Under the pieces are notes generated by a model that was not told the DNA's origin, ran no database searches, and saw only the letters and a program-made list of their open reading frames with translations. A program made the translations under genes and the position numbers. From assembly GCF_964188315.1 (NCBI RefSeq), contig NC_135659.1:27776001-27840000 (forward strand): DNA of 64,000 bases, given 5' to 3'. This document shows, piece after piece, positions 37,077-63,462 of the stretch. How positions within the stretch are numbered: position 1 is the first letter of the stretch; the number at the start of each line of letters is the position of its first letter. This DNA is from Podarcis muralis (lineage: Eukaryota).

Positions 37077-38692
37077 CAGTGGTACCCCGCAAGACGAACG
37101 CCTCGCAAGACGGAAAACCCGCTAGACGAAAGGTTTTTCCGTTTTGGAGACGCTTCGCAAAACGAATTTCCCTATGGGCTTCCTTCGCAAGACGAAAGCC
37201 CATAGGGAAATCTCCGGGACAGGGCGTCTTGCCCACTGTCCTCGGACCTCCTCCCGCCGCCAGGCTTCGGAAGGCTGCTCTGAAGCCTGGCGGGGGGCGG
37301 AGAGGTTTTTTAAAAACCCCGGGACAGCGGAGGACTTCTCTGCTGTCCGGGGCGATTTTAAAATGCTGCCGGGCGGCAGCGCTGCCGCCCAGCAGCATTT
37401 AAAAAAACCCCGGGACAGCGGGGGACTTCTCCTTTGTCCCGAGGTTTTTTAAAATGCTGGCGGGCGGCAGCGAAGGCTTCGCTGCCGCCCGCCAGCATTT
37501 TAAATTCGCCCCGGACAGCGGAGAAGTCCCCCGCTGTCCCGAGGTTTTTTAAAATGCTGGCGTCTTCCCCTTTCTCCCCGGACCTCTTTTGAAGCAAGGG
37601 GCGGCAAAGGGGAGAAGCGATCTTCTCCCCGTTGCCGCCCCTTGCTTCAAAAGAGGGGACAGAGGGAAAGGCGCGCGCCTTCTCCTCTCTCCCCGGACCC
37701 CTTTTGAAACAAGGGGCGGCAAAGGGGAGAAGCGATCTTCTCTCCGTTGCCTCCCCTTGCTTCAAAAGAGGGGACAGAGGGAAAGGCGCGCGCCTTCCTC
37801 TCTCTCCCCCCGGACCCCTTTTGAAGCAAGGGGCGGCAAAGGGGAGAAGCGATCTTCTCCCCGTTGCCGCCCCTTGCTTCAAAAGAGGGGACAGAGGGAA
37901 AGGCGCGCGCCTTCCTCTCTCTCCCCCCGGACCCCTTTTGAAGCAAGGGGCGGCAAAGGGGAGAAGCGATCTTCTCCCCTCCGCCCCTTGCTTCAAAAGA
38001 GGGGAAGGCTGGCGGGGGGCGAAAATCTTTGTCCCCCCTGGCTGCCTTCCCGGGAGGGCTTTTAAATCGCCCCGGACAGCGGAGAAGTCCTCCGCTGTCC
38101 GGGGCGATTTTAAAATGCTGCCGTGGGGGGGGGAGCAAAGACTTTCGCCCCCCCAGCCTTCTGAAGGCTGGCGGGGGGCGAAAATCTTTGTCCCCCCCTG
38201 CCTGCCTGCCTGCCTTTAAAAGCCCTCCCGGGGGAGCGGAGAAACGCGCTGCGTTTCTCCGCTCTCCCGGGAGGGCTTTTAAAAGCAGGCAGGCAGGGGG
38301 GACAAAGATTTTCGCCCCCCGCCAGCCTTCAGAAGAGGTCCTGGACCTCTTCTGAAGGCTGGTGGGGGGCGAAAATCTTTGTCCCCCCTGGCTGCCTTCC
38401 CGGGAGGGCTTTTAAATCGCCCCGGACAGCGGAGAAGTCCTCCGCTGTCCGGGGCGATTTTAAAATGCTGCCGTGGGGGGGGGGGGAGCAAAGACTTTCG
38501 CCCCCCCCCCCAGCCTTCAGAAGAGGTCGGGGGACAGATTGTCCCCGGACCTGGTCTGAAGTCGGTTTCCATAGGAACGCATTAATTGATTTTCAATGCA
38601 TTCCTATGGGAAACCGTGCAGCGCAAGACGAAAAACTCGCAAGAAGAAAAAACTTGCGGAACGAATTAATTTCGTCTTGCGAGGCACCACTA
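37077..38692. mobile_element. Non-autonomous Tc1/mariner (Tigger/pogo-like) element with GC-rich internal tandem hairpin array
   Basis: TA|CAGTGGTACCCCGCAAGACGAA ... TTCGTCTTGCGAGGCACCACTA|TA. Its termini are shared with the short copy at 62388-62700. Confidence 0.88.
37578..38004. repeat. Minisatellite of 115-117-bp palindromic units (3 full plus 1 partial)
   Basis: Unit marker CCGGAC at 37578, 37693, 37810 and 37927. Each unit contains a long inverted repeat. Confidence 0.92.
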
Positions 38693-38734
38693 TACTATGA
38701 AAGAATTCAAGGCTGGACTGGATGAATCGAGAAA

Positions 38735-38744
38735 CAAGATGGCG
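38735..38744 (+). promoter_or_regulatory. YY1 consensus motif (CAAGATGGCG) near the LINE 5' end; candidate internal promoter element
   Basis: Exact YY1 core at +28 to +37 of the element. An ETS-type ACTTCCTG lies at about 38808-38815. Function is inferred. Confidence 0.5.
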
Positions 38745-39359
38745 ACGGAGACAGCAGCCTAGCCAGTCTCCTCTGCTTTTAACTAAGCTTTTAAGTAGTT
38801 TTTAGCCACTTCCTGGTTTTAAACTCTCAGTTTTAACGTCTTACTAGATGTTTTACTACCTCCTCGCTTTGTTTTTAGTTTATTTAGTTTTTAGTTTATT
38901 GTTTTATTGTTTTACTGGAGAACGGCAGGGCGGAGCAGCGGGTCGAGGGAAGCCACTTTCTACCTCCGAATAGCAATGCTCCGAGCTCGCAGAGAAAGCA
39001 CCTCACTCTCAAGTTAAAGAAATCTGGAGCATAAACTGAAGTCTGGGAGCAACAAGGAGAACCGGAGGGGAAAAAAAATTCGTGGAGTTCAGCTGACAGC
39101 CGAAATCAGCACAGACGCAAACTTATATGCAGAGCGGAAAAAGGAAAGTGAGTTGCCCTAACGGCTATTGTTTCTTTCCCCCTACTAACCTTTTAAAGAG
39201 TAACTTTTTAAGAAGATACACTGAGTGTTTTATCATTGTTTTAAGTGATAAGGAAGACTAACAGCTGAAGGAAACCTGCTGTGAACTTTTACTGCAGCTG
39301 AGCATTGTAGTGTGTTTATTACAACAATAAAGAAATAATTTTACAACTTTAAAGAAACA

Positions 39360-41468
39360 ATGGTGACGACCAGGAGTGGCTGCAAAACCTCAGGCTTTTC
39401 TCTGAAGGCTGTAAGACCCACCTTTAAAAGAACCACTCTAAAGAATGCGCAAACAAAAATCACCCGCTTCTACATAAACAGAGCAAAATGTGGAACAAAT
39501 GAGGAAACGACTAAAATGAGTGAGAACAAGAACAAGAAGGGAAGAGAAATTCTACTCTCTCCTACCAATCTTTCTTACAGCCATAGTGAAGGACTGGTTA
39601 TGCAAAGAAAGGAGTGTACTAAAAGCAGTGATAAAAGCCTGAATATAGTGGAAGCAACACAAAATATCCTCGATACAGCCGATGAGGCATCCCCGAAACT
39701 GAAAGCCAAATCCCAAGTTCCCCCCGAACCATCGTTAGATCAAAAAATGGAGGAACTAATGTTAAAACAAATTTCGGAATTGGCCTCGGGAAATATTAAA
39801 CCTTCGAAAGACTCTTATCCTCATTCCCATGAGACAAATGAAGAGGATCTCTCAATCATCAAATGGCTAGTGCTCCTTACTGAGGACATTGAATCCATAA
39901 AGTCCTACCTGGACATTTGCACAAAAATTTTTACCATCATGGCTGACTCCTGTAAAACTCTCTGGAGAAAACACGCCGGAATGCCTGCAGAATCGGAAAG
40001 TAATCATGGCCTCGCCTCCACCCTCTGTAGGAGTGGCCCATTACGGAAGGGTAAGAAAACCTGCAGAGCTAATGCTTGTAACAGGAGATCCATAGTTGTA
40101 AAGAATGTTAAAAAAAGTAAAAACATAAAAAATTTTAAGACAGTGCATTATAAAAAAATGGTTTTTAAAAAACTTTTTAACTTACTTGAGAGCACAACAG
40201 CCTCTGGGACTAGAGGGAACCTGGTGAAGTCTTTAGCCAAGAAGTCAGTTAAACAGGATTTGCCCCCAAACGTCTGTGCTGATAAAGCTCTGGATTGTCT
40301 AAAACCTTCAGCGCATGCTCCACCACCAAGCGCTAAGCAAGACCTATTGCCCCAGGATCCATGGTCCTACGTTTTAACCATAGACAACTCCAAATCCAAT
40401 AAGGAGAGCATTTCAACAAATAAGAACTGGAAGCTGGTGTTGCTTCAAAACAAGCTTGTTTTTTCAAGCTATCCTAAGCCTCCAGGATTTATATCACAAG
40501 AGGATCGCAAAGTCCATTTACTGAACTTCCTTAAGGCATATATGCCAGGTACTTTGAGTAATCCCTCGGAGTTGGACAAAGTGGAATATCTATATTTTGA
40601 TGGCTTGTTTGCCAGGGCGGTGGCTACATTCCATGATCGGAGATTGGCAAAACTGATATATAAACACAGAGAACACCTAAAGACAAGTGGTGTAAAAATA
40701 TCAAGATACTTTAAAAATGTGGCCTCTCCTATCCCACTATTCCCCAGTCCTGCAACCTCGACTGCAGCACCTCGTCAAAAGGCTGAACACCACACTTTAA
40801 TTGATATAAAAGCCACTGAGCACTCGCCTAATCACCACCCAGAGTTACTTACTAATGATCTTCAAAGACCAGACTTTCCTGGGACTTTATATGAGGCGAG
40901 CCAAGGTAACGGGTTCGAAAGTTTTGAAAATAACTTAATTAACTCCTACTGCGCTCTCCCCCAAGAAACTCAGAACAAAATACTCTATAGACTGAATAAC
41001 CTTCGTTCTTGTCTGACAAATCTGACGAAGGACCAACAGGGACTACACAACCAAAACATATCTGATTATGTCCCAGATCAGGTCTCATGCTTCTATCGTC
41101 ACGAGCTGGATTTATGGGTCGGGAAACCCTCTGTCACCCCAGGCCAATTGGTTGTTGCGGAGATGAATCCATCCTCTCAGATCTTGGAGCCGAAACGCCC
41201 CTCCTATAACCCAGCTCGCATACAACCCATCTCAGAGGCAAACCTGGTCACTACATTAGCATGGGATAAAATGAGAGAATTAAATGAGACTGAATTGGGC
41301 TCCCCAAATAAAGTCCCCAGCATGGGTGCGCCAGGTTGCAACCCTAGCATTCCACCCTCCTCAAATGTGAGCATACTGAATAAATCTTTAAACATCATTG
41401 AATTAGCATCTGAACTATCTGAACCCGCAGAAAGGGCTAATAGTAAGAACCAGAGGAACTTGGTGTGA
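39360..41468 (+). CDS. LINE ORF1 protein (702 aa): basic N-terminus, probable coiled coil, possible RRM-like segment
   Basis: Uninterrupted ORF upstream of ORF2 inside the TSD-bounded element; starts MVTTRS. No esterase, PHD or CCHC motif was recognised. Confidence 0.85.
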   Translation: MVTTRSGCKTSGFSLKAVRPTFKRTTLKNAQTKITRFYINRAKCGTNEETTKMSENKNKKGREILLSPTNLSYSHSEGLVMQRKECTKSSDKSLNIVEATQNILDTADEASPKLKAKSQVPPEPSLDQKMEELMLKQISELASGNIKPSKDSYPHSHETNEEDLSIIKWLVLLTEDIESIKSYLDICTKIFTIMADSCKTLWRKHAGMPAESESNHGLASTLCRSGPLRKGKKTCRANACNRRSIVVKNVKKSKNIKNFKTVHYKKMVFKKLFNLLESTTASGTRGNLVKSLAKKSVKQDLPPNVCADKALDCLKPSAHAPPPSAKQDLLPQDPWSYVLTIDNSKSNKESISTNKNWKLVLLQNKLVFSSYPKPPGFISQEDRKVHLLNFLKAYMPGTLSNPSELDKVEYLYFDGLFARAVATFHDRRLAKLIYKHREHLKTSGVKISRYFKNVASPIPLFPSPATSTAAPRQKAEHHTLIDIKATEHSPNHHPELLTNDLQRPDFPGTLYEASQGNGFESFENNLINSYCALPQETQNKILYRLNNLRSCLTNLTKDQQGLHNQNISDYVPDQVSCFYRHELDLWVGKPSVTPGQLVVAEMNPSSQILEPKRPSYNPARIQPISEANLVTTLAWDKMRELNETELGSPNKVPSMGAPGCNPSIPPSSNVSILNKSLNIIELASELSEPAERANSKNQRNLV

Positions 41469-41537
41469 CATCCGGAATGCACCACGCATACCTCACTAGC
41501 ACCCTTAAATCAAAGATCTTTCCAAACTCTTTCTATT

Positions 41538-44500
41538 ATGTCCTGGAATGTAGCTGGACTCTCATGTAAATTAGCTGATTCTGATTTTATAAATTTTCTT
41601 GGGTCTTATGACATAATACTTCTGCAGGAAACCTGGGCTCTTAAACCTTTAAATATTCCTAATTTTATTACTTATAATTTACCTGCTACTAAAATGTCAA
41701 CAAAAGGTCGCCCTAAAGCTGGTTTGATCTGTGGTATCAAACAGTCTTCTAACCTTAAAATTAATTATATCAGAAATATTGGACAGTATGCTCAACTGTT
41801 ATCATTTTCCATTGTTTACCGGGAAATTATTCTTTTAAATATATATTTTCCTCCCCTAGAGTTGGAAAGTAGTCCAGGTTATGGTTGGAATATAGTCTCT
41901 GAAGAGTTGTATCTAATACGTAGTAAATCCCCAAATATCCCCCTGATTGTAACGGGAGACACCAATGCTCGAATTGGATCAGATAATACAGCTCTCTATA
42001 AACACTATGTCTCAAATCTAGCTGAAGATGCCCCACTTCCATTGAGAATAGGGAGGAATTCAAAGGACATCATTATTAATAAAGCAGGAGGAAAACTCTT
42101 ACAATTGGTTTTAGAATTTAACCTCTCATTTTTGAATGGCTCAATGTGGCCGGATATTCCAGGAAATTTTACCTTCAGCTCCAAAAGGGGTAGGAGCGTT
42201 ATCGATTATTCTCTAGTTTCCGTTGAAATGTTAAATGAAGTTGCCTCTTTTACAGTTGTACCTCGCTCAGAAAGTGACCACTTCCCAATAGTTTTAGAGA
42301 TGTACAGGAATCCTAGAAATAATGGTATTAGTCCTCTTATTAGTATTGATAAGACTGTCTATGCCAAAAGAATTTATATAAGTGATAAAAATAGGGAGGA
42401 TCTATTAGCAGTATTTGAAAATAACCCAGTTATTCTCGAACCTGCGGCTAACCAAAATTTGATGCCCTTGGAGGATAATGATTGTTATTATAAGAGTATC
42501 CAGGAATTATTTTCTTCTTTTTTAGACCCTCAGTTCAGCAACAAACCTTCAAATAAGTATAACTGGTTTGATAAAGGTTGTATTAACTATAAGAAAGAAC
42601 TTAGAACTTGTCTAAAAGAAGCCTATATTACCAACTCTCAAGGTCTCTGGAAGACTTATTTTGAAATGAAAAAGGCTTTTAAGAACATGCTCCTGGAAAA
42701 AAAATCTGAGTTTGCACTAGCCAAATGGTCTAAAATTGTTACTGCATTAGAAATTAAAGATACCAAAACCTTTTGGTCACTTCTCTCAATAAAAGATATC
42801 ACTGATTTCCCTAATATAAGCGATGAGGCTTGGATTTCACATTTTACTGCTGTTTTTTATGATCACCAAGTTTGTAAAAAGGAAAATTTTAAATCTTCTC
42901 TGGCAAAAACCACACAATTTCAAATTACTGTTGAGGAGATGAAAAGGATAATCTTTTCGTTTAAGCAAGGGAAATCACCTGGTATGGATGGCATTCCAAT
43001 AGACCTGTTGAGATTAGATGTAGAATGGTGGGCCAATAAACTTGTACCGCTTTTTAATTCTATCTATCACTCAGCCCTTGTACCTAAGTCATGGAACAAC
43101 TCAATAGTGGTACCGATCTTTAAAAAAGGTGATAGGAATTGCCAAGAGAACTACAGGCCTATAAGTTTGTTACCATGCATAAGTAAGATATATGCCAAAT
43201 CTCTGCTTATTAAATTGGAAGAATGGATGCTGACAAAAGGTCTACCTGGTAAAGAGCAAGCTGGTTTTAAGGCAGGCTCGTCAACTCTTGACCAGTGTCT
43301 AGTGTTAAGTCATCTTGTGGATAAATATGTCATGAGAAATAAACGAAAACTCTTTGTGGCATTTGTGGATTTAAAAAGTGCCTTTGATTCGGTCGACCGC
43401 AATAAACTATGGACTAAACTAGAACACCTTGGTATCGACCCATATCTACTTACACTGATTCAAAGTCTACATTCTAATAACCAAATATATGTTAAAGTAT
43501 CAAAAGACGGTAGACTTGCAGGTCCTATTCTGAATAATCGAGGAGTTAGGCAAGGCTGTATCTTGGCCCCTACCCTATTTAATCTATTTTTATCTGACCT
43601 ACCATTATTTCTTCAAAACGCAACCACTCATACTCCTTATTTAAACAAGAGCCCACTCTTTTTATTACTTTATGCAGATGATGCTGTAATTATTTCACTC
43701 TCTGTTTTGGGTTTAAAAAAATTATTTAAGAGTTTCTCAAACTACTGCTCTCTCAATAATCTCAAAATTAATTATGATAAGACAAAGATTATGCAATTCA
43801 GAAAGAGAGGGAACCCAAAAGGCTGTATAATTAATGGACATCTAATACAGGAAGTTAAGCACTTCAATTATCTGGGAATCACATTCAAAAATAATATGAA
43901 TTGGAATACACATATATGTGCTGCAATAGTTAAGGCCAAAGTGACAGCCCACCATATTAAATCCTATTTTTTTTCTCAAGTAGGAAACCGATTTATTCCA
44001 GCTGTATTGCAAGTGATTGACATGAAACTCTGTGCCCAACTTCTATACGGCACACCAGTGTGGATTTCAGGTGACCTCAAGAGGTTGGATAAATTTCACG
44101 CATCCCTTCTGAGGTCATTATTAGGACTTGCAAACTCTGTAAAATATGAAACAATATGTTGTGAGCTGGGAATACTGCCTTTATCAGTAAGAGCATGGCT
44201 GAGGACCTTGAAATATTGGATCTTCCTACATTATAGAGCCCTATCCCCTAATTCTATACTTTACGATCTTTTAAGTGATAGTGCAATCTACAATCTATCA
44301 TTGATTTGTAGGAGAAAACTGGATTCGATAGGGCTCACTCTAACTGATTTTGAAATCTCTGATCCCAAAGATATATGGGAAATTATCAGGAAGACCCTCA
44401 CAGAAAAAAGTGTTCTCGCCATGCTTGAGGTTGCAAAGCACAGCACCTGCTCTCCTATCCACCTAAATCTCCCTTTGTGTAGAGATTTCCAAAAGGGATA

Positions 44501-44852
44501 CATGACAAATCTGAAGAAACATGAATTGTGTAGGCTGTTTATGTTGGCCAGATTTAACATGTTTCCCTCGGCGGTAGTGAGAGGAAGATACTTAGCTATC
44601 CCAGAATCAGAGCGTCTCTGCAAATGCAGAAAACAGGAACCCGATACTCTAGAGCATATATTCTTTTCCTGTGATTTTGGCAGCTATGCCAGAGGACAAT
44701 TATTTGAGGCCCTAAAATTTAATAGACAGATTTTTACACAACCAACTGTTCAGGACCTGCTGGCGGACAGCGATGATCAAATTACCTTAATAACGGCTGA
44801 ATTTTTAAGTGCTGTCCATGAAGAAAGAGTGGGCCATGGTAAAGAGACTTAG
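41538..44852 (+). CDS. LINE ORF2 protein (1104 aa): AP endonuclease, reverse transcriptase and C-terminal Cys/His motif
   Basis: APE motifs SWNVAGL, LLQETW, GDTNARIG, SVIDY and SDHFPI. RT motifs KSPGMDG, YRPISLL, FVDLKSAFDSV, GVRQGCILAPTLF and YADD (43671-43682). C-terminal GRY...RLCKC...HIFFSC (44619-44672). No internal stops. Confidence 0.97.
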   Translation: MSWNVAGLSCKLADSDFINFLGSYDIILLQETWALKPLNIPNFITYNLPATKMSTKGRPKAGLICGIKQSSNLKINYIRNIGQYAQLLSFSIVYREIILLNIYFPPLELESSPGYGWNIVSEELYLIRSKSPNIPLIVTGDTNARIGSDNTALYKHYVSNLAEDAPLPLRIGRNSKDIIINKAGGKLLQLVLEFNLSFLNGSMWPDIPGNFTFSSKRGRSVIDYSLVSVEMLNEVASFTVVPRSESDHFPIVLEMYRNPRNNGISPLISIDKTVYAKRIYISDKNREDLLAVFENNPVILEPAANQNLMPLEDNDCYYKSIQELFSSFLDPQFSNKPSNKYNWFDKGCINYKKELRTCLKEAYITNSQGLWKTYFEMKKAFKNMLLEKKSEFALAKWSKIVTALEIKDTKTFWSLLSIKDITDFPNISDEAWISHFTAVFYDHQVCKKENFKSSLAKTTQFQITVEEMKRIIFSFKQGKSPGMDGIPIDLLRLDVEWWANKLVPLFNSIYHSALVPKSWNNSIVVPIFKKGDRNCQENYRPISLLPCISKIYAKSLLIKLEEWMLTKGLPGKEQAGFKAGSSTLDQCLVLSHLVDKYVMRNKRKLFVAFVDLKSAFDSVDRNKLWTKLEHLGIDPYLLTLIQSLHSNNQIYVKVSKDGRLAGPILNNRGVRQGCILAPTLFNLFLSDLPLFLQNATTHTPYLNKSPLFLLLYADDAVIISLSVLGLKKLFKSFSNYCSLNNLKINYDKTKIMQFRKRGNPKGCIINGHLIQEVKHFNYLGITFKNNMNWNTHICAAIVKAKVTAHHIKSYFFSQVGNRFIPAVLQVIDMKLCAQLLYGTPVWISGDLKRLDKFHASLLRSLLGLANSVKYETICCELGILPLSVRAWLRTLKYWIFLHYRALSPNSILYDLLSDSAIYNLSLICRRKLDSIGLTLTDFEISDPKDIWEIIRKTLTEKSVLAMLEVAKHSTCSPIHLNLPLCRDFQKGYMTNLKKHELCRLFMLARFNMFPSAVVRGRYLAIPESERLCKCRKQEPDTLEHIFFSCDFGSYARGQLFEALKFNRQIFTQPTVQDLLADSDDQITLITAEFLSAVHEERVGHGKET

Positions 44853-45721
44853 TGGTTTTTAATGGTAGGTGATGTTGCTGTGTTGTATTATATTATGTAT
44901 GTACATCGATTTATTTCTTGGAGTTAAGAATAGGACTGGGTTAAATTGTGTTCACTGAGCCCGTATTTTATACAGTCTGTATATGATGTTTGTTTGTTAA
45001 TGTGAGATGCGATATGCCTAATAAAGGATTTTGAATTTGAATTTGAATACTATGAAAGAATTGTTCATTTTTAAAGCGCAACCAGTAAAAAAAAAACCCC
45101 AACATGTTCTTGTCAATATCAAGAAGTGAGACAAGGCTTAGCAAAGAACCATGAAGGTCAACTTGCTTTTGAGTTTTTTCAGAAATTTGTTTTTACTAAC
45201 TATAGTTTACTTGGGGGTCTTGAGCTCAGACATAATGAGGAATTCTGGTCAATTTAAAAACAGAAGGGAAAGCTTCTGATCTCTTGGGTGGAGGAACCCG
45301 AATCAGATTCATGCTCACCATAGAGTTATGCATGAAAAGGCCAAGCAACATGGGGAAAGTCACCCAGTAAGGTTGAATGGGGATTTGCACCTGGATCTCC
45401 CAACCCTAGTCTGAAGCTGCAGCTACTGCAGCACAATGGGCGTCACCTTTCTTGACCTTGTGCTATGTCTGGCTCTGTATAAACACTGCACACAAGACAG
45501 CAAGAGTAGTTTACATTTTAAGGGAACTGGCATAATAATGCAAATGCTTTATGGGGCACACTTGTTGCACCAAGCTTGCCGCAAACTGGAAAATGGGGTG
45601 AGAAAAGTGAGATCCAGGGTCATCAAATAGTTTTATGCATCCAGATGGATATATCCTGCAGTTGCTTCCACACACTCCTCGATTCTTTTGTGAATTGCCA
45701 ATGTTCAGTCACAGCAGATAC

Positions 45722-46243
45722 ATAAAAGCGATGACAAACCTAGACAGCATCTTAAAAAGCAGAGACATCACTTTGCCAATAAAGGTCCGTATAGTTAAAG
45801 CCATAGTTTTCCCAGTAGTGATGCATGGAAGCGAGAGCTGGACCATAAAGAAGGCCGATCGCCGAAGAATTGATGCTTTTGAATTATGGTGCTGGAGGAG
45901 ACTCTTGAGAGTCCCATGGACTGCAAGAAGATCAAACCTATCCATTCTGAAGGAAATCAGCCCTGAGTGCTCACTGGAAGGACAGATCGTGAAGCTGAGG
46001 CTCCAGTACTTTGGCCACCTCATGAGAAGAGAAGACTCCCTGGAAAAGCCCCTGATGTTGGGAAAGATAGAGGGCACAAGGAGAAGGGGACGACAGAGGA
46101 TGAGATGGTTGGACAGTGTTCTCAAAACTACAAGCATGAGTTTGACCAAACTGCGGGAGGCAGTGGAAGACAGGAGTGCCTGGCGTGCTCTGGTCCATGG
46201 GATCACGAAGAGTCGGACACGACTAAACGACTAAACAACAACA
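45722..46243 (+). mobile_element. BovB (RTE clade) LINE, 5'-truncated
   Basis: Encodes AMTNLDSILKSRDITLP...WCWRRLLRVPWTARRSN...GHLMRREDSLEK...KSRTRLND, the BovB ORF C-terminus. Tail GACTAAACGACTAAACAACAAC. Confidence 0.93.
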
Positions 46244-62387: not shown

Positions 62388-62700
62388 CAGTGGTGCCCCG
62401 CAAGACGAATGCCTCACAAGACGAAAAACTCGCTAGACGAAAGGGTTTTCCGTTTTTTGAGTCGTTCCGCAAGACGAATTTCCCTATGGGCTTGCTTCGC
62501 AAGACGAAACGTCTTGCGAGTTCTTGCGAGTTTGTTTCCTTTTTCTTAAAGCCACTAAGCCGTTAATAGCCGCTAAGCCGCTAAGCCATTAATAGCCGCT
62601 AAGCTGCTAAGCCGCTAATAGCCGTGCTTCGCAAGACGAAAAAACTGCAAGACGAAGAGACTCACGGAACGGATTAATTTCGTCTTGCGAGGCACCACTG
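62388..62700. mobile_element. Tigger-like MITE, short relative of 37077-38692
   Basis: TA|CAGTGGTGCCCCGCAAGACGAA ... TTCGTCTTGCGAGGCACCACTG|TA, with an internal AAGCCGCT-type short tandem array. Confidence 0.9.
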
Positions 62701-63462
62701 TATTAGAAGTATTACATGGGAAAGCCTAGAGCAAAATGTTCCACTGCTTTAATTATTATTATTTATTAAATTTCAATATCACCTTTCATCCTAGGATCCA
62801 GTTCATAGCATAACAATGCAAAATGAAAACACAAAATAAAATGAAAACAAAGCAAGCCAATACCCCCCCAGTATTTTTTTATTTTGCAATGTAATTATTC
62901 AACAATACATAGCATAACAAACTGAAACAACCCTCCCCCAACTGACACTAATGCTATTACAATGACCACACTACTAGATTCATGTTTGAAGGGTTCAAAA
63001 GGGTGGGTGGAAGAGCTGACCTTATAGGAGCAGGAAATCATGGGACAGGGGAAATAAAAAGCCCTACAGATACTGTCCAGAAAGACGTAACACATAAATG
63101 GCTGCTCATCAGACGAAATTATCTGACTCGTTATTACTGCTCAGCATGAAAGATGTACTACTGGATTATTGGGATGCAGTCTATGTGGGGCCGTCATTGA
63201 AAGGAGATTGGTAATTCCAGCTAGTCCACAAGGTTGGTGGACCGGAAGCCACAAAAGCAAGTGATTTCCTTATTACATCAACTCTACTGACTTCCAGGTC
63301 ACTTCTGGGCCCAATTCAAGGTACTGGTTAGGGTTAGGACCAGGTAACCTAAACAGCTTGGAACCCACCTGTCTATTAAGCTCTGCAGGAGAGGCTCTCC
63401 TCCACATTCCATCAACATCTGATGCACGTTGAGCAGAGATGGATGTGAGGGCCTCCTCAACT

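What the first reader, a model, noticed from the sequence alone, without database searches (positions are those of the whole stretch)
41466..41540. ORF1 and ORF2 are in frame and separated by a single leaky-context TGA: candidate stop-codon readthrough
After TGA (41466-41468) come 23 sense codons (HPECTTHTSLAPLNQRSFQTLSI) with no stop, leading directly into ORF2's ATG. The +4 base is C (UGA-C is the most readthrough-prone context). The residues LSI just before the Met complete the conserved first APE strand (L-x-I-x-S-W-N-V), suggesting the endonuclease domain begins upstream of that AUG. Readthrough would give a 1830-aa ORF1-EN-RT fusion. Human L1 instead has two in-frame stops in its spacer and uses reinitiation. 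Alternatives are reinitiation, or a nonsense mutation in a natively single-ORF element.
Basis: partly seen in the sequence, partly recalled or inferred. Interest (0 to 1): 0.78.

Follow-up and report, generated by a model that had tools for sequence, protein, structure and literature searches.

The report
LINE genes joined by leaky stop
A young lizard jumping gene (a LINE) has its two genes in one reading frame, separated only by a leaky-type stop codon; a dozen distant relatives keep the same layout, so its enzyme is probably made, at least partly, as a rare fusion to the first protein, much as retroviruses make Gag-Pol.

Summary
ORF1 (39360-41468) ends in TGA followed by C. Twenty-three stop-free codons then lead in frame to the ORF2 ATG (41538).

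This is not a private mutation. A high-depth collapsed contig from the same species, a contig from a second species and a sister subfamily about 7% diverged all keep the TGA, the C and the 69-nt spacer.

The strongest evidence is comparative. In the clade that holds this element, 12 of 14 families with a visible ORF1 have ORF1 and ORF2 in frame with a single stop. That stop is UGA or UAG, never UAA. The linker is stop-free, varies from 1 to 78 codons, and runs straight into the first strand of the endonuclease. Most of these families have no AUG in that stretch. Three relatives carry textbook readthrough contexts (UGA-CAA-UUA, UGA-CAA-CUA, UGA-CUA-GGC). One nested relative instead has a -1 overlap with the HIV-type slippery site U UUU UUA.

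The best reading is Gag-Pol-like recoding that yields an ORF1p-ORF2p fusion. It is inferred, not measured. This copy has a weaker context (only +4 C) and its own AUG, so reinitiation remains possible, and no downstream RNA structure is supported.

The scan had already noted the same layout in other LINEs of this genome (s1-192000, s1-189838).

The parts
38692..38707 (+). 5' target-site duplication (16 bp; the first 2 bases are ambiguous with the tail)
   Evidence: An exact 16-mer occurs only at 38692 and 45047
38708..45046 (+). Full-length non-LTR retrotransposon (LINE), about 6.3 kb, the only copy in the window
   Evidence: Flanking duplications; self-BLAST and tblastn find no other copy
39360..41468 (+). 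ORF1, 702 aa, with no Pfam or PDB match; homologous to the ORF1s of five relatives
41466..41469 (+). ORF1 stop TGA plus the +4 C (UGA-C tetranucleotide)
   Evidence: unchanged in contigs of two species and in L009
41469..41528 (+). Stop-free in-frame linker of 20 codons, predicted mostly disordered (residues 1-16 have pLDDT under 50)
   Evidence: no amino-acid constraint against L009
41529..41549 (+). Codons of the first endonuclease beta-strand, L-S-I-M-S-W-N; the ORF2 ATG is its fourth codon
   Evidence: Alignment A3; AlphaFold model strand 21-27 with pLDDT about 95
41538..44852 (+). ORF2, 1104 aa. It holds an AP-endonuclease (aa 1-250), a reverse transcriptase (aa 529-783, nt 43122-43886) and a Cys/His motif near the C-terminus (C1028-C1045, nt 44619-44672)
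   Evidence: Pfam PF03372, PF14529 and PF00078; invariant C1028, C1030, H1040 and C1045 in A4
41477..41569 (+). Out-of-frame AUG 9 nt after the stop, opening a 30-codon ORF that overlaps the ORF2 AUG
   Evidence: the ATG is kept in L009
45019..45046 (+). 3' end: AATAAA followed by a short (TTTGAA)3 microsatellite tail
   Evidence: relatives end likewise, with AATAAA plus a short repeat
45047..45062 (+). 3' target-site duplication

Best explanation
The ORF1-ORF2 junction is a Gag-Pol-like recoding site. Most ribosomes terminate at the UGA and release ORF1p. A small fraction decode UGA-C with a near-cognate tRNA, continue through a 20-codon flexible linker into the endonuclease, and make an ORF1p-linker-EN-RT fusion of 1830 aa. 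This would set a high ORF1p:ORF2p ratio and tie the enzyme to the ORF1p particle on its own RNA.

Shown here: the layout, its status as the family majority, and its conservation across a deep clade. Inferred: that the stop is decoded, by which tRNA and at what rate, and that the fusion is the active form. In this particular family the AUG at 41538 may add a second route to ORF2p.
For: 1. Family trait, not a private change. In a DNA run of about 1.3 Gb, a 682-nt contig with word depth 125 spans 41147-41828 with a single difference, so it represents many near-identical copies. A second species' contig keeps the TGA and an open spacer. L009, at 91-96% nucleotide identity, keeps TGA-CAT-CCG and all 69 nt with no indel.

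2. Deep conservation of the reading frame.
- In a clade with 98-99 SH-aLRT support, 12 of 14 families with a visible ORF1 are in frame with exactly one stop.
- These are the window, L012, L005, L008, L007, L013 and L014 (UGA), and L001/L004, L002, L017, L003 and L022 (UAG).
- Linker lengths range from 1 to 78 codons.
- Binomial P for at least 12 of 14 at 1/3 is about 8e-5.
- Long linkers are stop-free only in this frame. L002 has 0 stops there against 1 and 24 in the other frames (shuffle P 0.0015). L014 has 0 against 4 and 9 (P 0.027).

3. No AUG. Eight of the twelve (L002, L003, L007, L008, L012, L014, L017, L022) have no in-frame AUG between the stop and the catalytic Asn. In L007 and L008 the endonuclease strand starts 1-2 codons after the UGA.

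4. Stop identity and context.
- UAA never occurs, although it is one transition away from either stop.
- Six of the seven UGA lineages have +4 C.
- L007 is UGA-CAA-UUA, L005 is UGA-CAA-CUA and L012 is UGA-CUA-GGC.
- CAAUUA and CUAGGC are the hexamers reported to drive more than 15% UGA readthrough in HEK293T cells, and a single C after UGA is the Sindbis virus signal (PMC13517186).

5. A nested relative (L010/L011) replaces the stop with a -1 overlap. It carries U UUU UUA in the ORF1 phase and has no AUG in the ORF2 frame. This is a different recoding device with the same fusion product.

6. In the window itself, three residues of the first endonuclease strand lie upstream of the AUG. An out-of-frame AUG 9 nt after the stop overlaps the ORF2 AUG.

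7. More distant LINEs fetched in the same way (L079, L085, L074) have ORF1 in another frame. The in-frame layout is therefore not general to LINEs and not an artefact of the method.
Against: - There is no direct evidence of translation through the stop: no ribosome profiling, reporter or peptide data.
- The window's hexamer (CAU-CCG) is not a known strong context; only the +4 C fits.
- No downstream RNA structure is supported, either here (z -0.05 and 0.23) or in any relative (absolute z below 2). Pseudoknots were not searched.
- This family keeps an AUG in a usable context (A at -3). A Met at the same strand position in the unrelated L001 family could equally be a start codon.
- The spacer shows no amino-acid constraint (3 nonsynonymous, 0 synonymous changes against L009), and the close comparisons are too shallow to test frame conservation.
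- Human L1 ORF2 is reported to be translated without needing its AUG (own memory of Alisch et al. 2006; the paper itself was not read here). Lack of an AUG alone is therefore not diagnostic.
- The hosts of most relative contigs are unknown. Lineages share ancestry, so the binomial figure overstates independence.
Confidence: 0.6

Rival explanations
1. Termination-reinitiation. Ribosomes finish ORF1 at the UGA, and a fraction restart at the AUG at 41538, as proposed for human L1 or for SART1-type coupling. They would produce a free ORF2p that begins with M-S-W-N. On this view the in-frame layout is tolerated but not used.
For: - The AUG is present with A at -3 and is kept in L009 and in the second species.
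- L005 and L013 also have an AUG 5-6 codons after the stop.
- The reviews read here list reinitiation or coupling as the known routes to LINE ORF2 (PMC5972666; PMC3894237).
- The spacer shows no amino-acid constraint.
Against: - Reinitiation does not require a shared frame or a stop-free spacer, yet 12 of 14 families keep both across linkers of 1-78 codons.
- Eight of those twelve have no AUG before the catalytic Asn.
- An AUG-started protein would lack three residues of the first beta-strand.
- An out-of-frame AUG lies first in the scanning path and overlaps the ORF2 AUG.
- ORF1 is 702 codons long, which is unfavourable for reinitiation (PMC3894237).
Confidence: 0.25
2. RNA editing of the stop. 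An ADAR-type A-to-I change would turn UGA or UAG into UGG (Trp) in a fraction of transcripts, as at the amber/W site of hepatitis delta virus, giving the same fusion from edited RNA.
For: Only UGA and UAG occur, never UAA, and both become UGG with a single A-to-I change. This is my own inference from general knowledge of HDV editing.
Against: - No double-stranded structure around the stop is supported here or in relatives.
- Contigs of the runs guessed to be RNA carry TGA, although contigs cannot show minor variants.
- The textbook readthrough hexamers and the +4 C bias in relatives are not explained by editing.
Confidence: 0.05
3. A natively single-ORF element in which this copy, or this family, acquired a nonsense mutation.
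For: Some gene predictions in arthropods fuse an ORF1-like region to EN-RT without a stop (P0142, P0171, P0095). These are automatic gene models that may have spliced a stop out.
Against: - The TGA is the majority state in a high-copy young family and is present in a second species and a sister subfamily.
- Twelve diverged families have a stop at the same boundary.
- The copy has intact ORFs and perfect 16-bp target-site duplications.
Confidence: 0.02
4. Chance. The frames coincide and the short spacer happens to lack stops, with no functional meaning.
For: For this copy alone the joint probability is about 0.12.
Against: The same coincidence recurs in 12 of 14 families, including linkers of 67-78 codons that are stop-free only in this frame.
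Confidence: 0.03

Closest known systems
Gammaretrovirus Gag-Pol readthrough (Moloney MLV, UAG-G plus pseudoknot)
   Same: The structural/RNA-binding ORF and the enzyme ORF are in frame with one leaky stop. The enzyme is made as a low-level fusion. The UAG-side relatives even share UAG-G (PMC13517186).
   Different: This is a non-LTR element with no protease to release the enzyme. No downstream pseudoknot or hairpin is supported. The stop here is UGA-C.
Alphavirus-type (type II) and TMV-type (type I) context-driven readthrough
   Same: It shares UGA followed by C, the Sindbis virus minimal signal. Relatives carry CAAUUA, CAACUA and CUAGGC directly after UGA.
   Different: The window's own hexamer, CAU-CCG, is not one of the characterised motifs. 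No extended stem-loop is present.
HIV-1-type -1 programmed frameshift (U UUU UUA)
   Same: The nested relative L010/L011 has this exact heptamer in the ORF1 phase, and its AUG-less ORF2 lies in the -1 frame.
   Different: This does not apply to the window's element, which is in frame. No significant downstream structure was found in L010 (z 0.36).
Human LINE-1 ORF2 translation (unconventional termination-reinitiation) and Bombyx SART1 UAAUG coupling
   Same: All are bicistronic LINE RNAs in which ORF2p must be made far less often than ORF1p (PMC5972666; PMC3894237).
   Different: SART1 overlaps its stop and start codons. Neither needs nor keeps a shared frame with a single stop and a stop-free linker into the endonuclease.
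Plant L1-type LINEs (Arabidopsis Ta11/ATLN), reported with ORF1 and ORF2 in frame across one amber codon
   Same: This would be the same layout and the same proposal of suppression. It rests on my own memory only; the papers were not held and could not be checked.
   Different: Those belong to a different clade and kingdom, use UAG, and to my knowledge were never tested. Nothing comparable for vertebrate LINEs was found in 10 literature searches.

Membership tests
Programmed stop-codon readthrough | Downstream ORF in the same frame, with no further stop before the functional domain | tested here: met
Programmed stop-codon readthrough | Leaky stop (UGA or UAG, not UAA) with a favourable 3' context | tested here: inconclusive
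   UGA with +4 C is met. The hexamer CAU-CCG is not a characterised motif. Relatives carry CAAUUA, CAACUA and CUAGGC.
Programmed stop-codon readthrough | The stop, the frame and the open linker are conserved among diverged relatives | tested here: met
   Twelve of 14 families; linkers of 1-78 codons
Programmed stop-codon readthrough | Stimulatory RNA structure downstream (needed only for type II/III sites) | tested here: not met
   z-scores range from -1.7 to +1.8 in 11 loci; pseudoknots were not searched
Programmed stop-codon readthrough | A measured readthrough product | not testable with these tools
   All runs are held as contigs; no ribosome profiling or proteomics data are available
L1-type termination-reinitiation | ORF2 start independent of the ORF1 frame; spacer not required to be open | tested here: not met
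   The frame and the open spacer are conserved across the clade
APE-type non-LTR retrotransposon (LINE) | [quoted passage not shown] | tested here: met
   Pfam; duplications and tail; catalytic N, E, D and H columns conserved
L1 clade | Poly(A) tail; ORF1 with the Transposase_22 RRM | tested here: not met
   The tail is (TTTGAA)3. No Pfam hit was found for ORF1 or for the relatives' ORF1s. The best PDB hit of ORF2 is nonetheless human L1 ORF2p at 1.7e-24.
Vingi clade | Compact element of about 3.1 kb (Vingi-2_Gav, 3128 bp) with a single ORF of about 993 aa | tested here: not met
   This element is 6.3 kb with two ORFs. Vingi sizes come from PMC5786205 and PMC3708506. No reference RT sequence was available for a tree.
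RTE-X (label given by the first-stage note s1-152599) | RT phylogeny placing it with Repbase RTEX references | not testable with these tools
   No Repbase references are on hand. The G-V-R-Q-G-C motif in the RT seemed to me, by eye and from memory, closer to the L1/RTE groups than to the CR1 or I groups; this is not a test.

The most novel reading that the evidence does not exclude
A whole clade of animal LINEs, from lizards to invertebrates, makes its endonuclease/reverse transcriptase only as an ORF1p-ORF2p fusion by translational recoding. Stop-codon readthrough (UGA or UAG) and -1 frameshifting would be interchangeable devices within the clade, just as they are among retroviruses. That would be a third route to LINE ORF2p, beside reinitiation and 2A skipping, and it would imply an active fusion protein with no protease to separate its halves.
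Probability: 0.55. Interest if true: 0.8.

Novelty: new variant of a known kind. Interest (0 to 1): 0.68.

Why it matters
How LINEs translate ORF2 from a bicistronic RNA is a long-standing open question. The reviews read here list coupling, reinitiation, IRES and 2A skipping, but not readthrough.

A young, high-copy, apparently intact vertebrate LINE with a Gag-Pol-like junction makes the question directly testable, especially alongside relatives that carry textbook readthrough hexamers or an HIV-type slippery site. It would show that non-LTR elements arrived at the same stoichiometry device as retroviruses. It would also imply that an ORF1p-ORF2p fusion can carry out target-primed reverse transcription, which bears on cis-preference.

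There is a practical consequence too. Gene callers truncate these AUG-less ORF2s by 24-135 codons, removing catalytic endonuclease residues. Annotation, and any engineering use of such elements, would therefore start from the wrong protein.

Tried and rejected
- **Other copies in the window:** none found.
- **Downstream RNA structure:** not supported in the window or in 10 relatives.
- **Codon-level constraint in the spacer:** not detectable. Against L009 there are 3 nonsynonymous and 0 synonymous changes. The second species has one synonymous and one F-to-L change.
- **ORF1 identity:** no Pfam, PDB or Atlas lead. An L1-like RRM ('RRNNLIF' in L001 and L002) is seen by eye only.
- **Clade assignment:** Vingi was rejected on size and ORF number. 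RTE-X could not be tested.
- **The search for related loci with the first alignment:** failed because no conserved stretch was found. A closer alignment worked.
- **Literature:** 10 searches found no paper on readthrough in LINEs. Kojima 2005, Kojima 2011 and Wright 1996 are not held, so the plant precedent rests on memory.
- **Selenocysteine:** considered and dropped, because the sister clade uses UAG. No SECIS search was done.
- **Expression:** the runs guessed to be RNA are held only as contigs, so nothing can be said about expression.
Full report
**What is there.**
The window holds one full-length LINE at 38708-45046 on the + strand. It is flanked by an exact 16-bp target-site duplication (38692-38707 and 45047-62) and ends in AATAAA plus (TTTGAA)3. 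No other copy lies in the window.

ORF1 (39360-41468, 702 aa) has no Pfam or PDB match. ORF2 (41538-44852, 1104 aa) has an AP-endonuclease at aa 1-250, a reverse transcriptase at aa 529-783 and a C-terminal Cys/His motif.

The host is a lizard. The best protein hit is a partial Podarcis muralis protein at 93% identity, so the host is probably a lacertid.

**Checking the observation.**
TGA is at 41466-41468 and 41469 is C. Both ORFs are in the same frame, and the 23 codons between them have no stop.

Taken alone this is unremarkable. The chance of being in frame is 1/3, and a 69-nt stretch is stop-free with frequency 0.35 elsewhere in the window.

The claim that the endonuclease begins upstream of the AUG holds. 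In an alignment of post-stop peptides from 12 loci, L-S-I-M-S-W-N-V aligns with the consensus L-K-I-L-S-W-N-V. An AlphaFold model (pTM 0.83) places the first strand at residues 21-27, L-S-I-M-S-W-N, with pLDDT about 95. Residues 1-16 are disordered.

**Not a private mutation.**
Contigs of four public runs were laid on 40700-42400.
- In a DNA run of about 1.3 Gb from the same species, one 682-nt contig with word depth 125 spans 41147-41828 with a single difference (41429). It therefore represents many near-identical copies, and they carry the TGA and the spacer.
- A contig from a second species spans 41385-42267 with 13 substitutions and no gap. The TGA is kept. The two spacer changes are a synonymous Leu change and F-to-L.
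- A sister subfamily found through ORF1 (L009, 87% ORF1 identity, 91-96% nucleotide identity, no indel over 3 kb) has the identical TGA-CAT-CCG. Its 69-nt spacer carries three substitutions, all nonsynonymous, and it keeps the ATG.

Between the window and L009, pN/pS is 0.14 in the endonuclease and 0.45 in ORF1. The spacer has 0 synonymous and 3 nonsynonymous changes. The spacer peptide is thus a free linker, and these shallow comparisons cannot test frame conservation.

**The deep comparison.**
Word-index and exhaustive protein searches with ORF2 gave relatives at 25-38% identity. Their contigs were fetched, and a metagenome scan added more. Junctions were read by direct translation.

In a clade supported at 98-99 SH-aLRT (quick IQ-TREE searches, because the careful run did not finish), 14 families show an ORF1.

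Twelve are in frame with exactly one stop, and the frame stays open into the endonuclease strand.

| Side of the clade | Family | Stop and context | Linker (codons) |
|---|---|---|---|
| Lizard side (UGA) | window | UGA-CAU | 20 |
| | L012 | UGA-CUA-GGC | 17 |
| | L005 | UGA-CAA-CUA | 9 |
| | L008 (sequence almost identical to a second Podarcis muralis protein) | UGA-CUC | 2 |
| | L007 | UGA-CAA-UUA | 1 |
| | L013 | UGA-AUU | 17 |
| | L014 | UGA-CUU | 67 |
| Invertebrate/metagenome side (UAG) | L001/L004 | UAG-GAC | 10-19 |
| | L002 | UAG-GCC | 74 |
| | L017 | UAG-GAC | about 72 |
| | L003 | UAG-AGG | 23 |
| | L022 | UAG-GAC | about 21 |

Three points follow.
- **Frame is selected.** Linker length has changed repeatedly, always by whole codons. 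Binomial P for at least 12 of 14 at 1/3 is about 8e-5. This overstates independence, since the lineages share ancestry.
- **Long linkers are open only in this frame.** L002 has 0 stops against 1 and 24 in the other frames (shuffle P 0.0015). L014 has 0 against 4 and 9 (P 0.027).
- **AUG is often missing.** Eight of the twelve have no in-frame AUG before the catalytic Asn. Gene callers had begun those ORF2s 24-135 codons too late or at non-AUG codons.

Two further features stand out.
- UAA never occurs, although it is one transition away from either stop.
- Six of the seven UGA lineages have +4 C.

According to a 2026 review, CAAUUA and CUAGGC after UGA give more than 15% readthrough in HEK293T saturation mutagenesis, and a single C after UGA is the Sindbis virus signal (PMC13517186). 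L007 and L012 carry exactly those hexamers.

**The two exceptions are informative.**
L010/L011 is nested inside the UGA clade (97-99 support). Its ORF2 lies in the -1 frame and overlaps the end of ORF1. The heptamer U UUU UUA sits in the ORF1 phase (G-UU UUU UUA, L010 2289-2295), and there is no AUG in the ORF2 frame before the endonuclease. This is the HIV-1-type frameshift site. It is a different recoding device that gives the same ORF1-ORF2 fusion.

The L016/L018/L021 family is also in the -1 frame. A run of six U lies at its ORF1 stop (AUU UUU UAA), and it has an AUG further on. I leave that family open.

More distant LINEs fetched by the same method (L079, L085, L074) have ORF1 in another frame. 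The in-frame layout is therefore neither general to LINEs nor an artefact of the procedure.

**Mechanism.**
The simplest account of a conserved frame, a single non-UAA stop, a +4 C bias, known readthrough hexamers, AUG-less endonucleases and a frameshifting sister is this: ORF2p in the clade is made as a C-terminal extension of ORF1p by recoding, as Gag-Pol is in retroviruses.

For the window's own family the signal is weaker.
- Only the +4 C fits a known context.
- No RNA structure is supported (z -0.05 and 0.23).
- An AUG with A at -3 sits in the first strand.

A free ORF2p started at that AUG would lack three strand residues. A ribosome that resumes scanning would first meet an out-of-frame AUG at 41477, whose 30-codon ORF overlaps the ORF2 AUG. 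Neither point excludes reinitiation.

| Reading | Probability |
|---|---|
| Readthrough fusion | about 0.6 |
| Reinitiation at the AUG | about 0.25 |
| Editing of the stop to UGG | about 0.05 |
| Nonsense mutation or chance (together) | about 0.05 |

Nothing here measures translation.

**Comparison with what is known.**
The reviews read on LINE translation and on recoding list SART1 UAAUG coupling, L1 unconventional reinitiation, IRES proposals and 2A skipping, but not readthrough. Ten literature searches found no report for animal LINEs.

From memory, Arabidopsis Ta11/ATLN LINEs were described with an in-frame amber codon between the ORFs and suppression was suggested. Those papers are not held and I could not verify this.

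The same scan had already noted UGA-CUA in-frame junctions with AUG-less ORF2 in other LINEs of this genome (s1-192000 with a follow-up, and s1-189838). L012 shows that context independently.

Clade name: this element is not L1 by tail or ORF1, and not Vingi by size or ORF number. The RTE-X label of note s1-152599 could not be tested.

**Verdict.**
The finding is a new variant of a known kind: Gag-Pol-type recoding in a vertebrate non-LTR retrotransposon clade.

Noticed in passing
window 39450-39473; alignment A2: The PIP-like box at the ORF1 N-terminus (Q-T-K-I-T-R-F-Y) is kept as Q-x-x-I-x-x-aromatic-hydrophobic in all six ORF1s aligned, at only 18-25% overall identity. Q31 and I34 are among the nine invariant columns.
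   Followed up: partly
L010 2283-2400 and L011 2205-2320: A relative nested within the readthrough clade has its ORF2 in the -1 frame, with the HIV-type slippery heptamer U UUU UUA in the ORF1 phase. The heptamer lies inside a conserved ORF1 motif (N-G-C-V-F-L-D). There is no AUG before the endonuclease. The downstream fold is not significant (z 0.36).
   Followed up: partly
L021 740-800 (also L016, L018): In a sister family, ORF1 ends AUU UUU UAA and the -1 frame reads GAU UUU UUA AAU onward into ORF2. This is a possible -1 slip on a U6 run at the stop codon. ORF2 also has an AUG 28 codons further on.
   Followed up: no
L001 544-1533; proteins P0142, P0171, P0095: A 2A-like motif (D-x-E-x-N-P-G-P) sits at the N-terminus of ORF1 in a metagenome relative and in arthropod gene models of the same clade. 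The 2013 survey reported a 2A within ORF1 for only one element.
   Followed up: no
window 38300-38385 and 38614-38697: Just upstream of the LINE lies a long GC-rich near-perfect palindrome. An 84-bp stretch there recurs at 62622-62705 with 84.5% identity, so the LINE is inserted in or beside another repeat.
   Followed up: no
window about 45740-45900: By eye, this stretch reads like the C-terminal part of a BovB/RTE-type ORF2. It was not tested.
   Followed up: no
L007, L008, L012, L014, L002: Automatic gene calls start these ORF2s 24-135 codons after the true beginning of the endonuclease, or at GTG/TTG. This removes the catalytic Asn and Glu from the predicted proteins.
   Followed up: yes
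L039 1406-1480: A distant LINE that groups with the RNase H-bearing outgroup also has a 257-codon ORF1 in frame with an AUG-less endonuclease across UAG-G. The layout may therefore have arisen more than once.
   Followed up: partly
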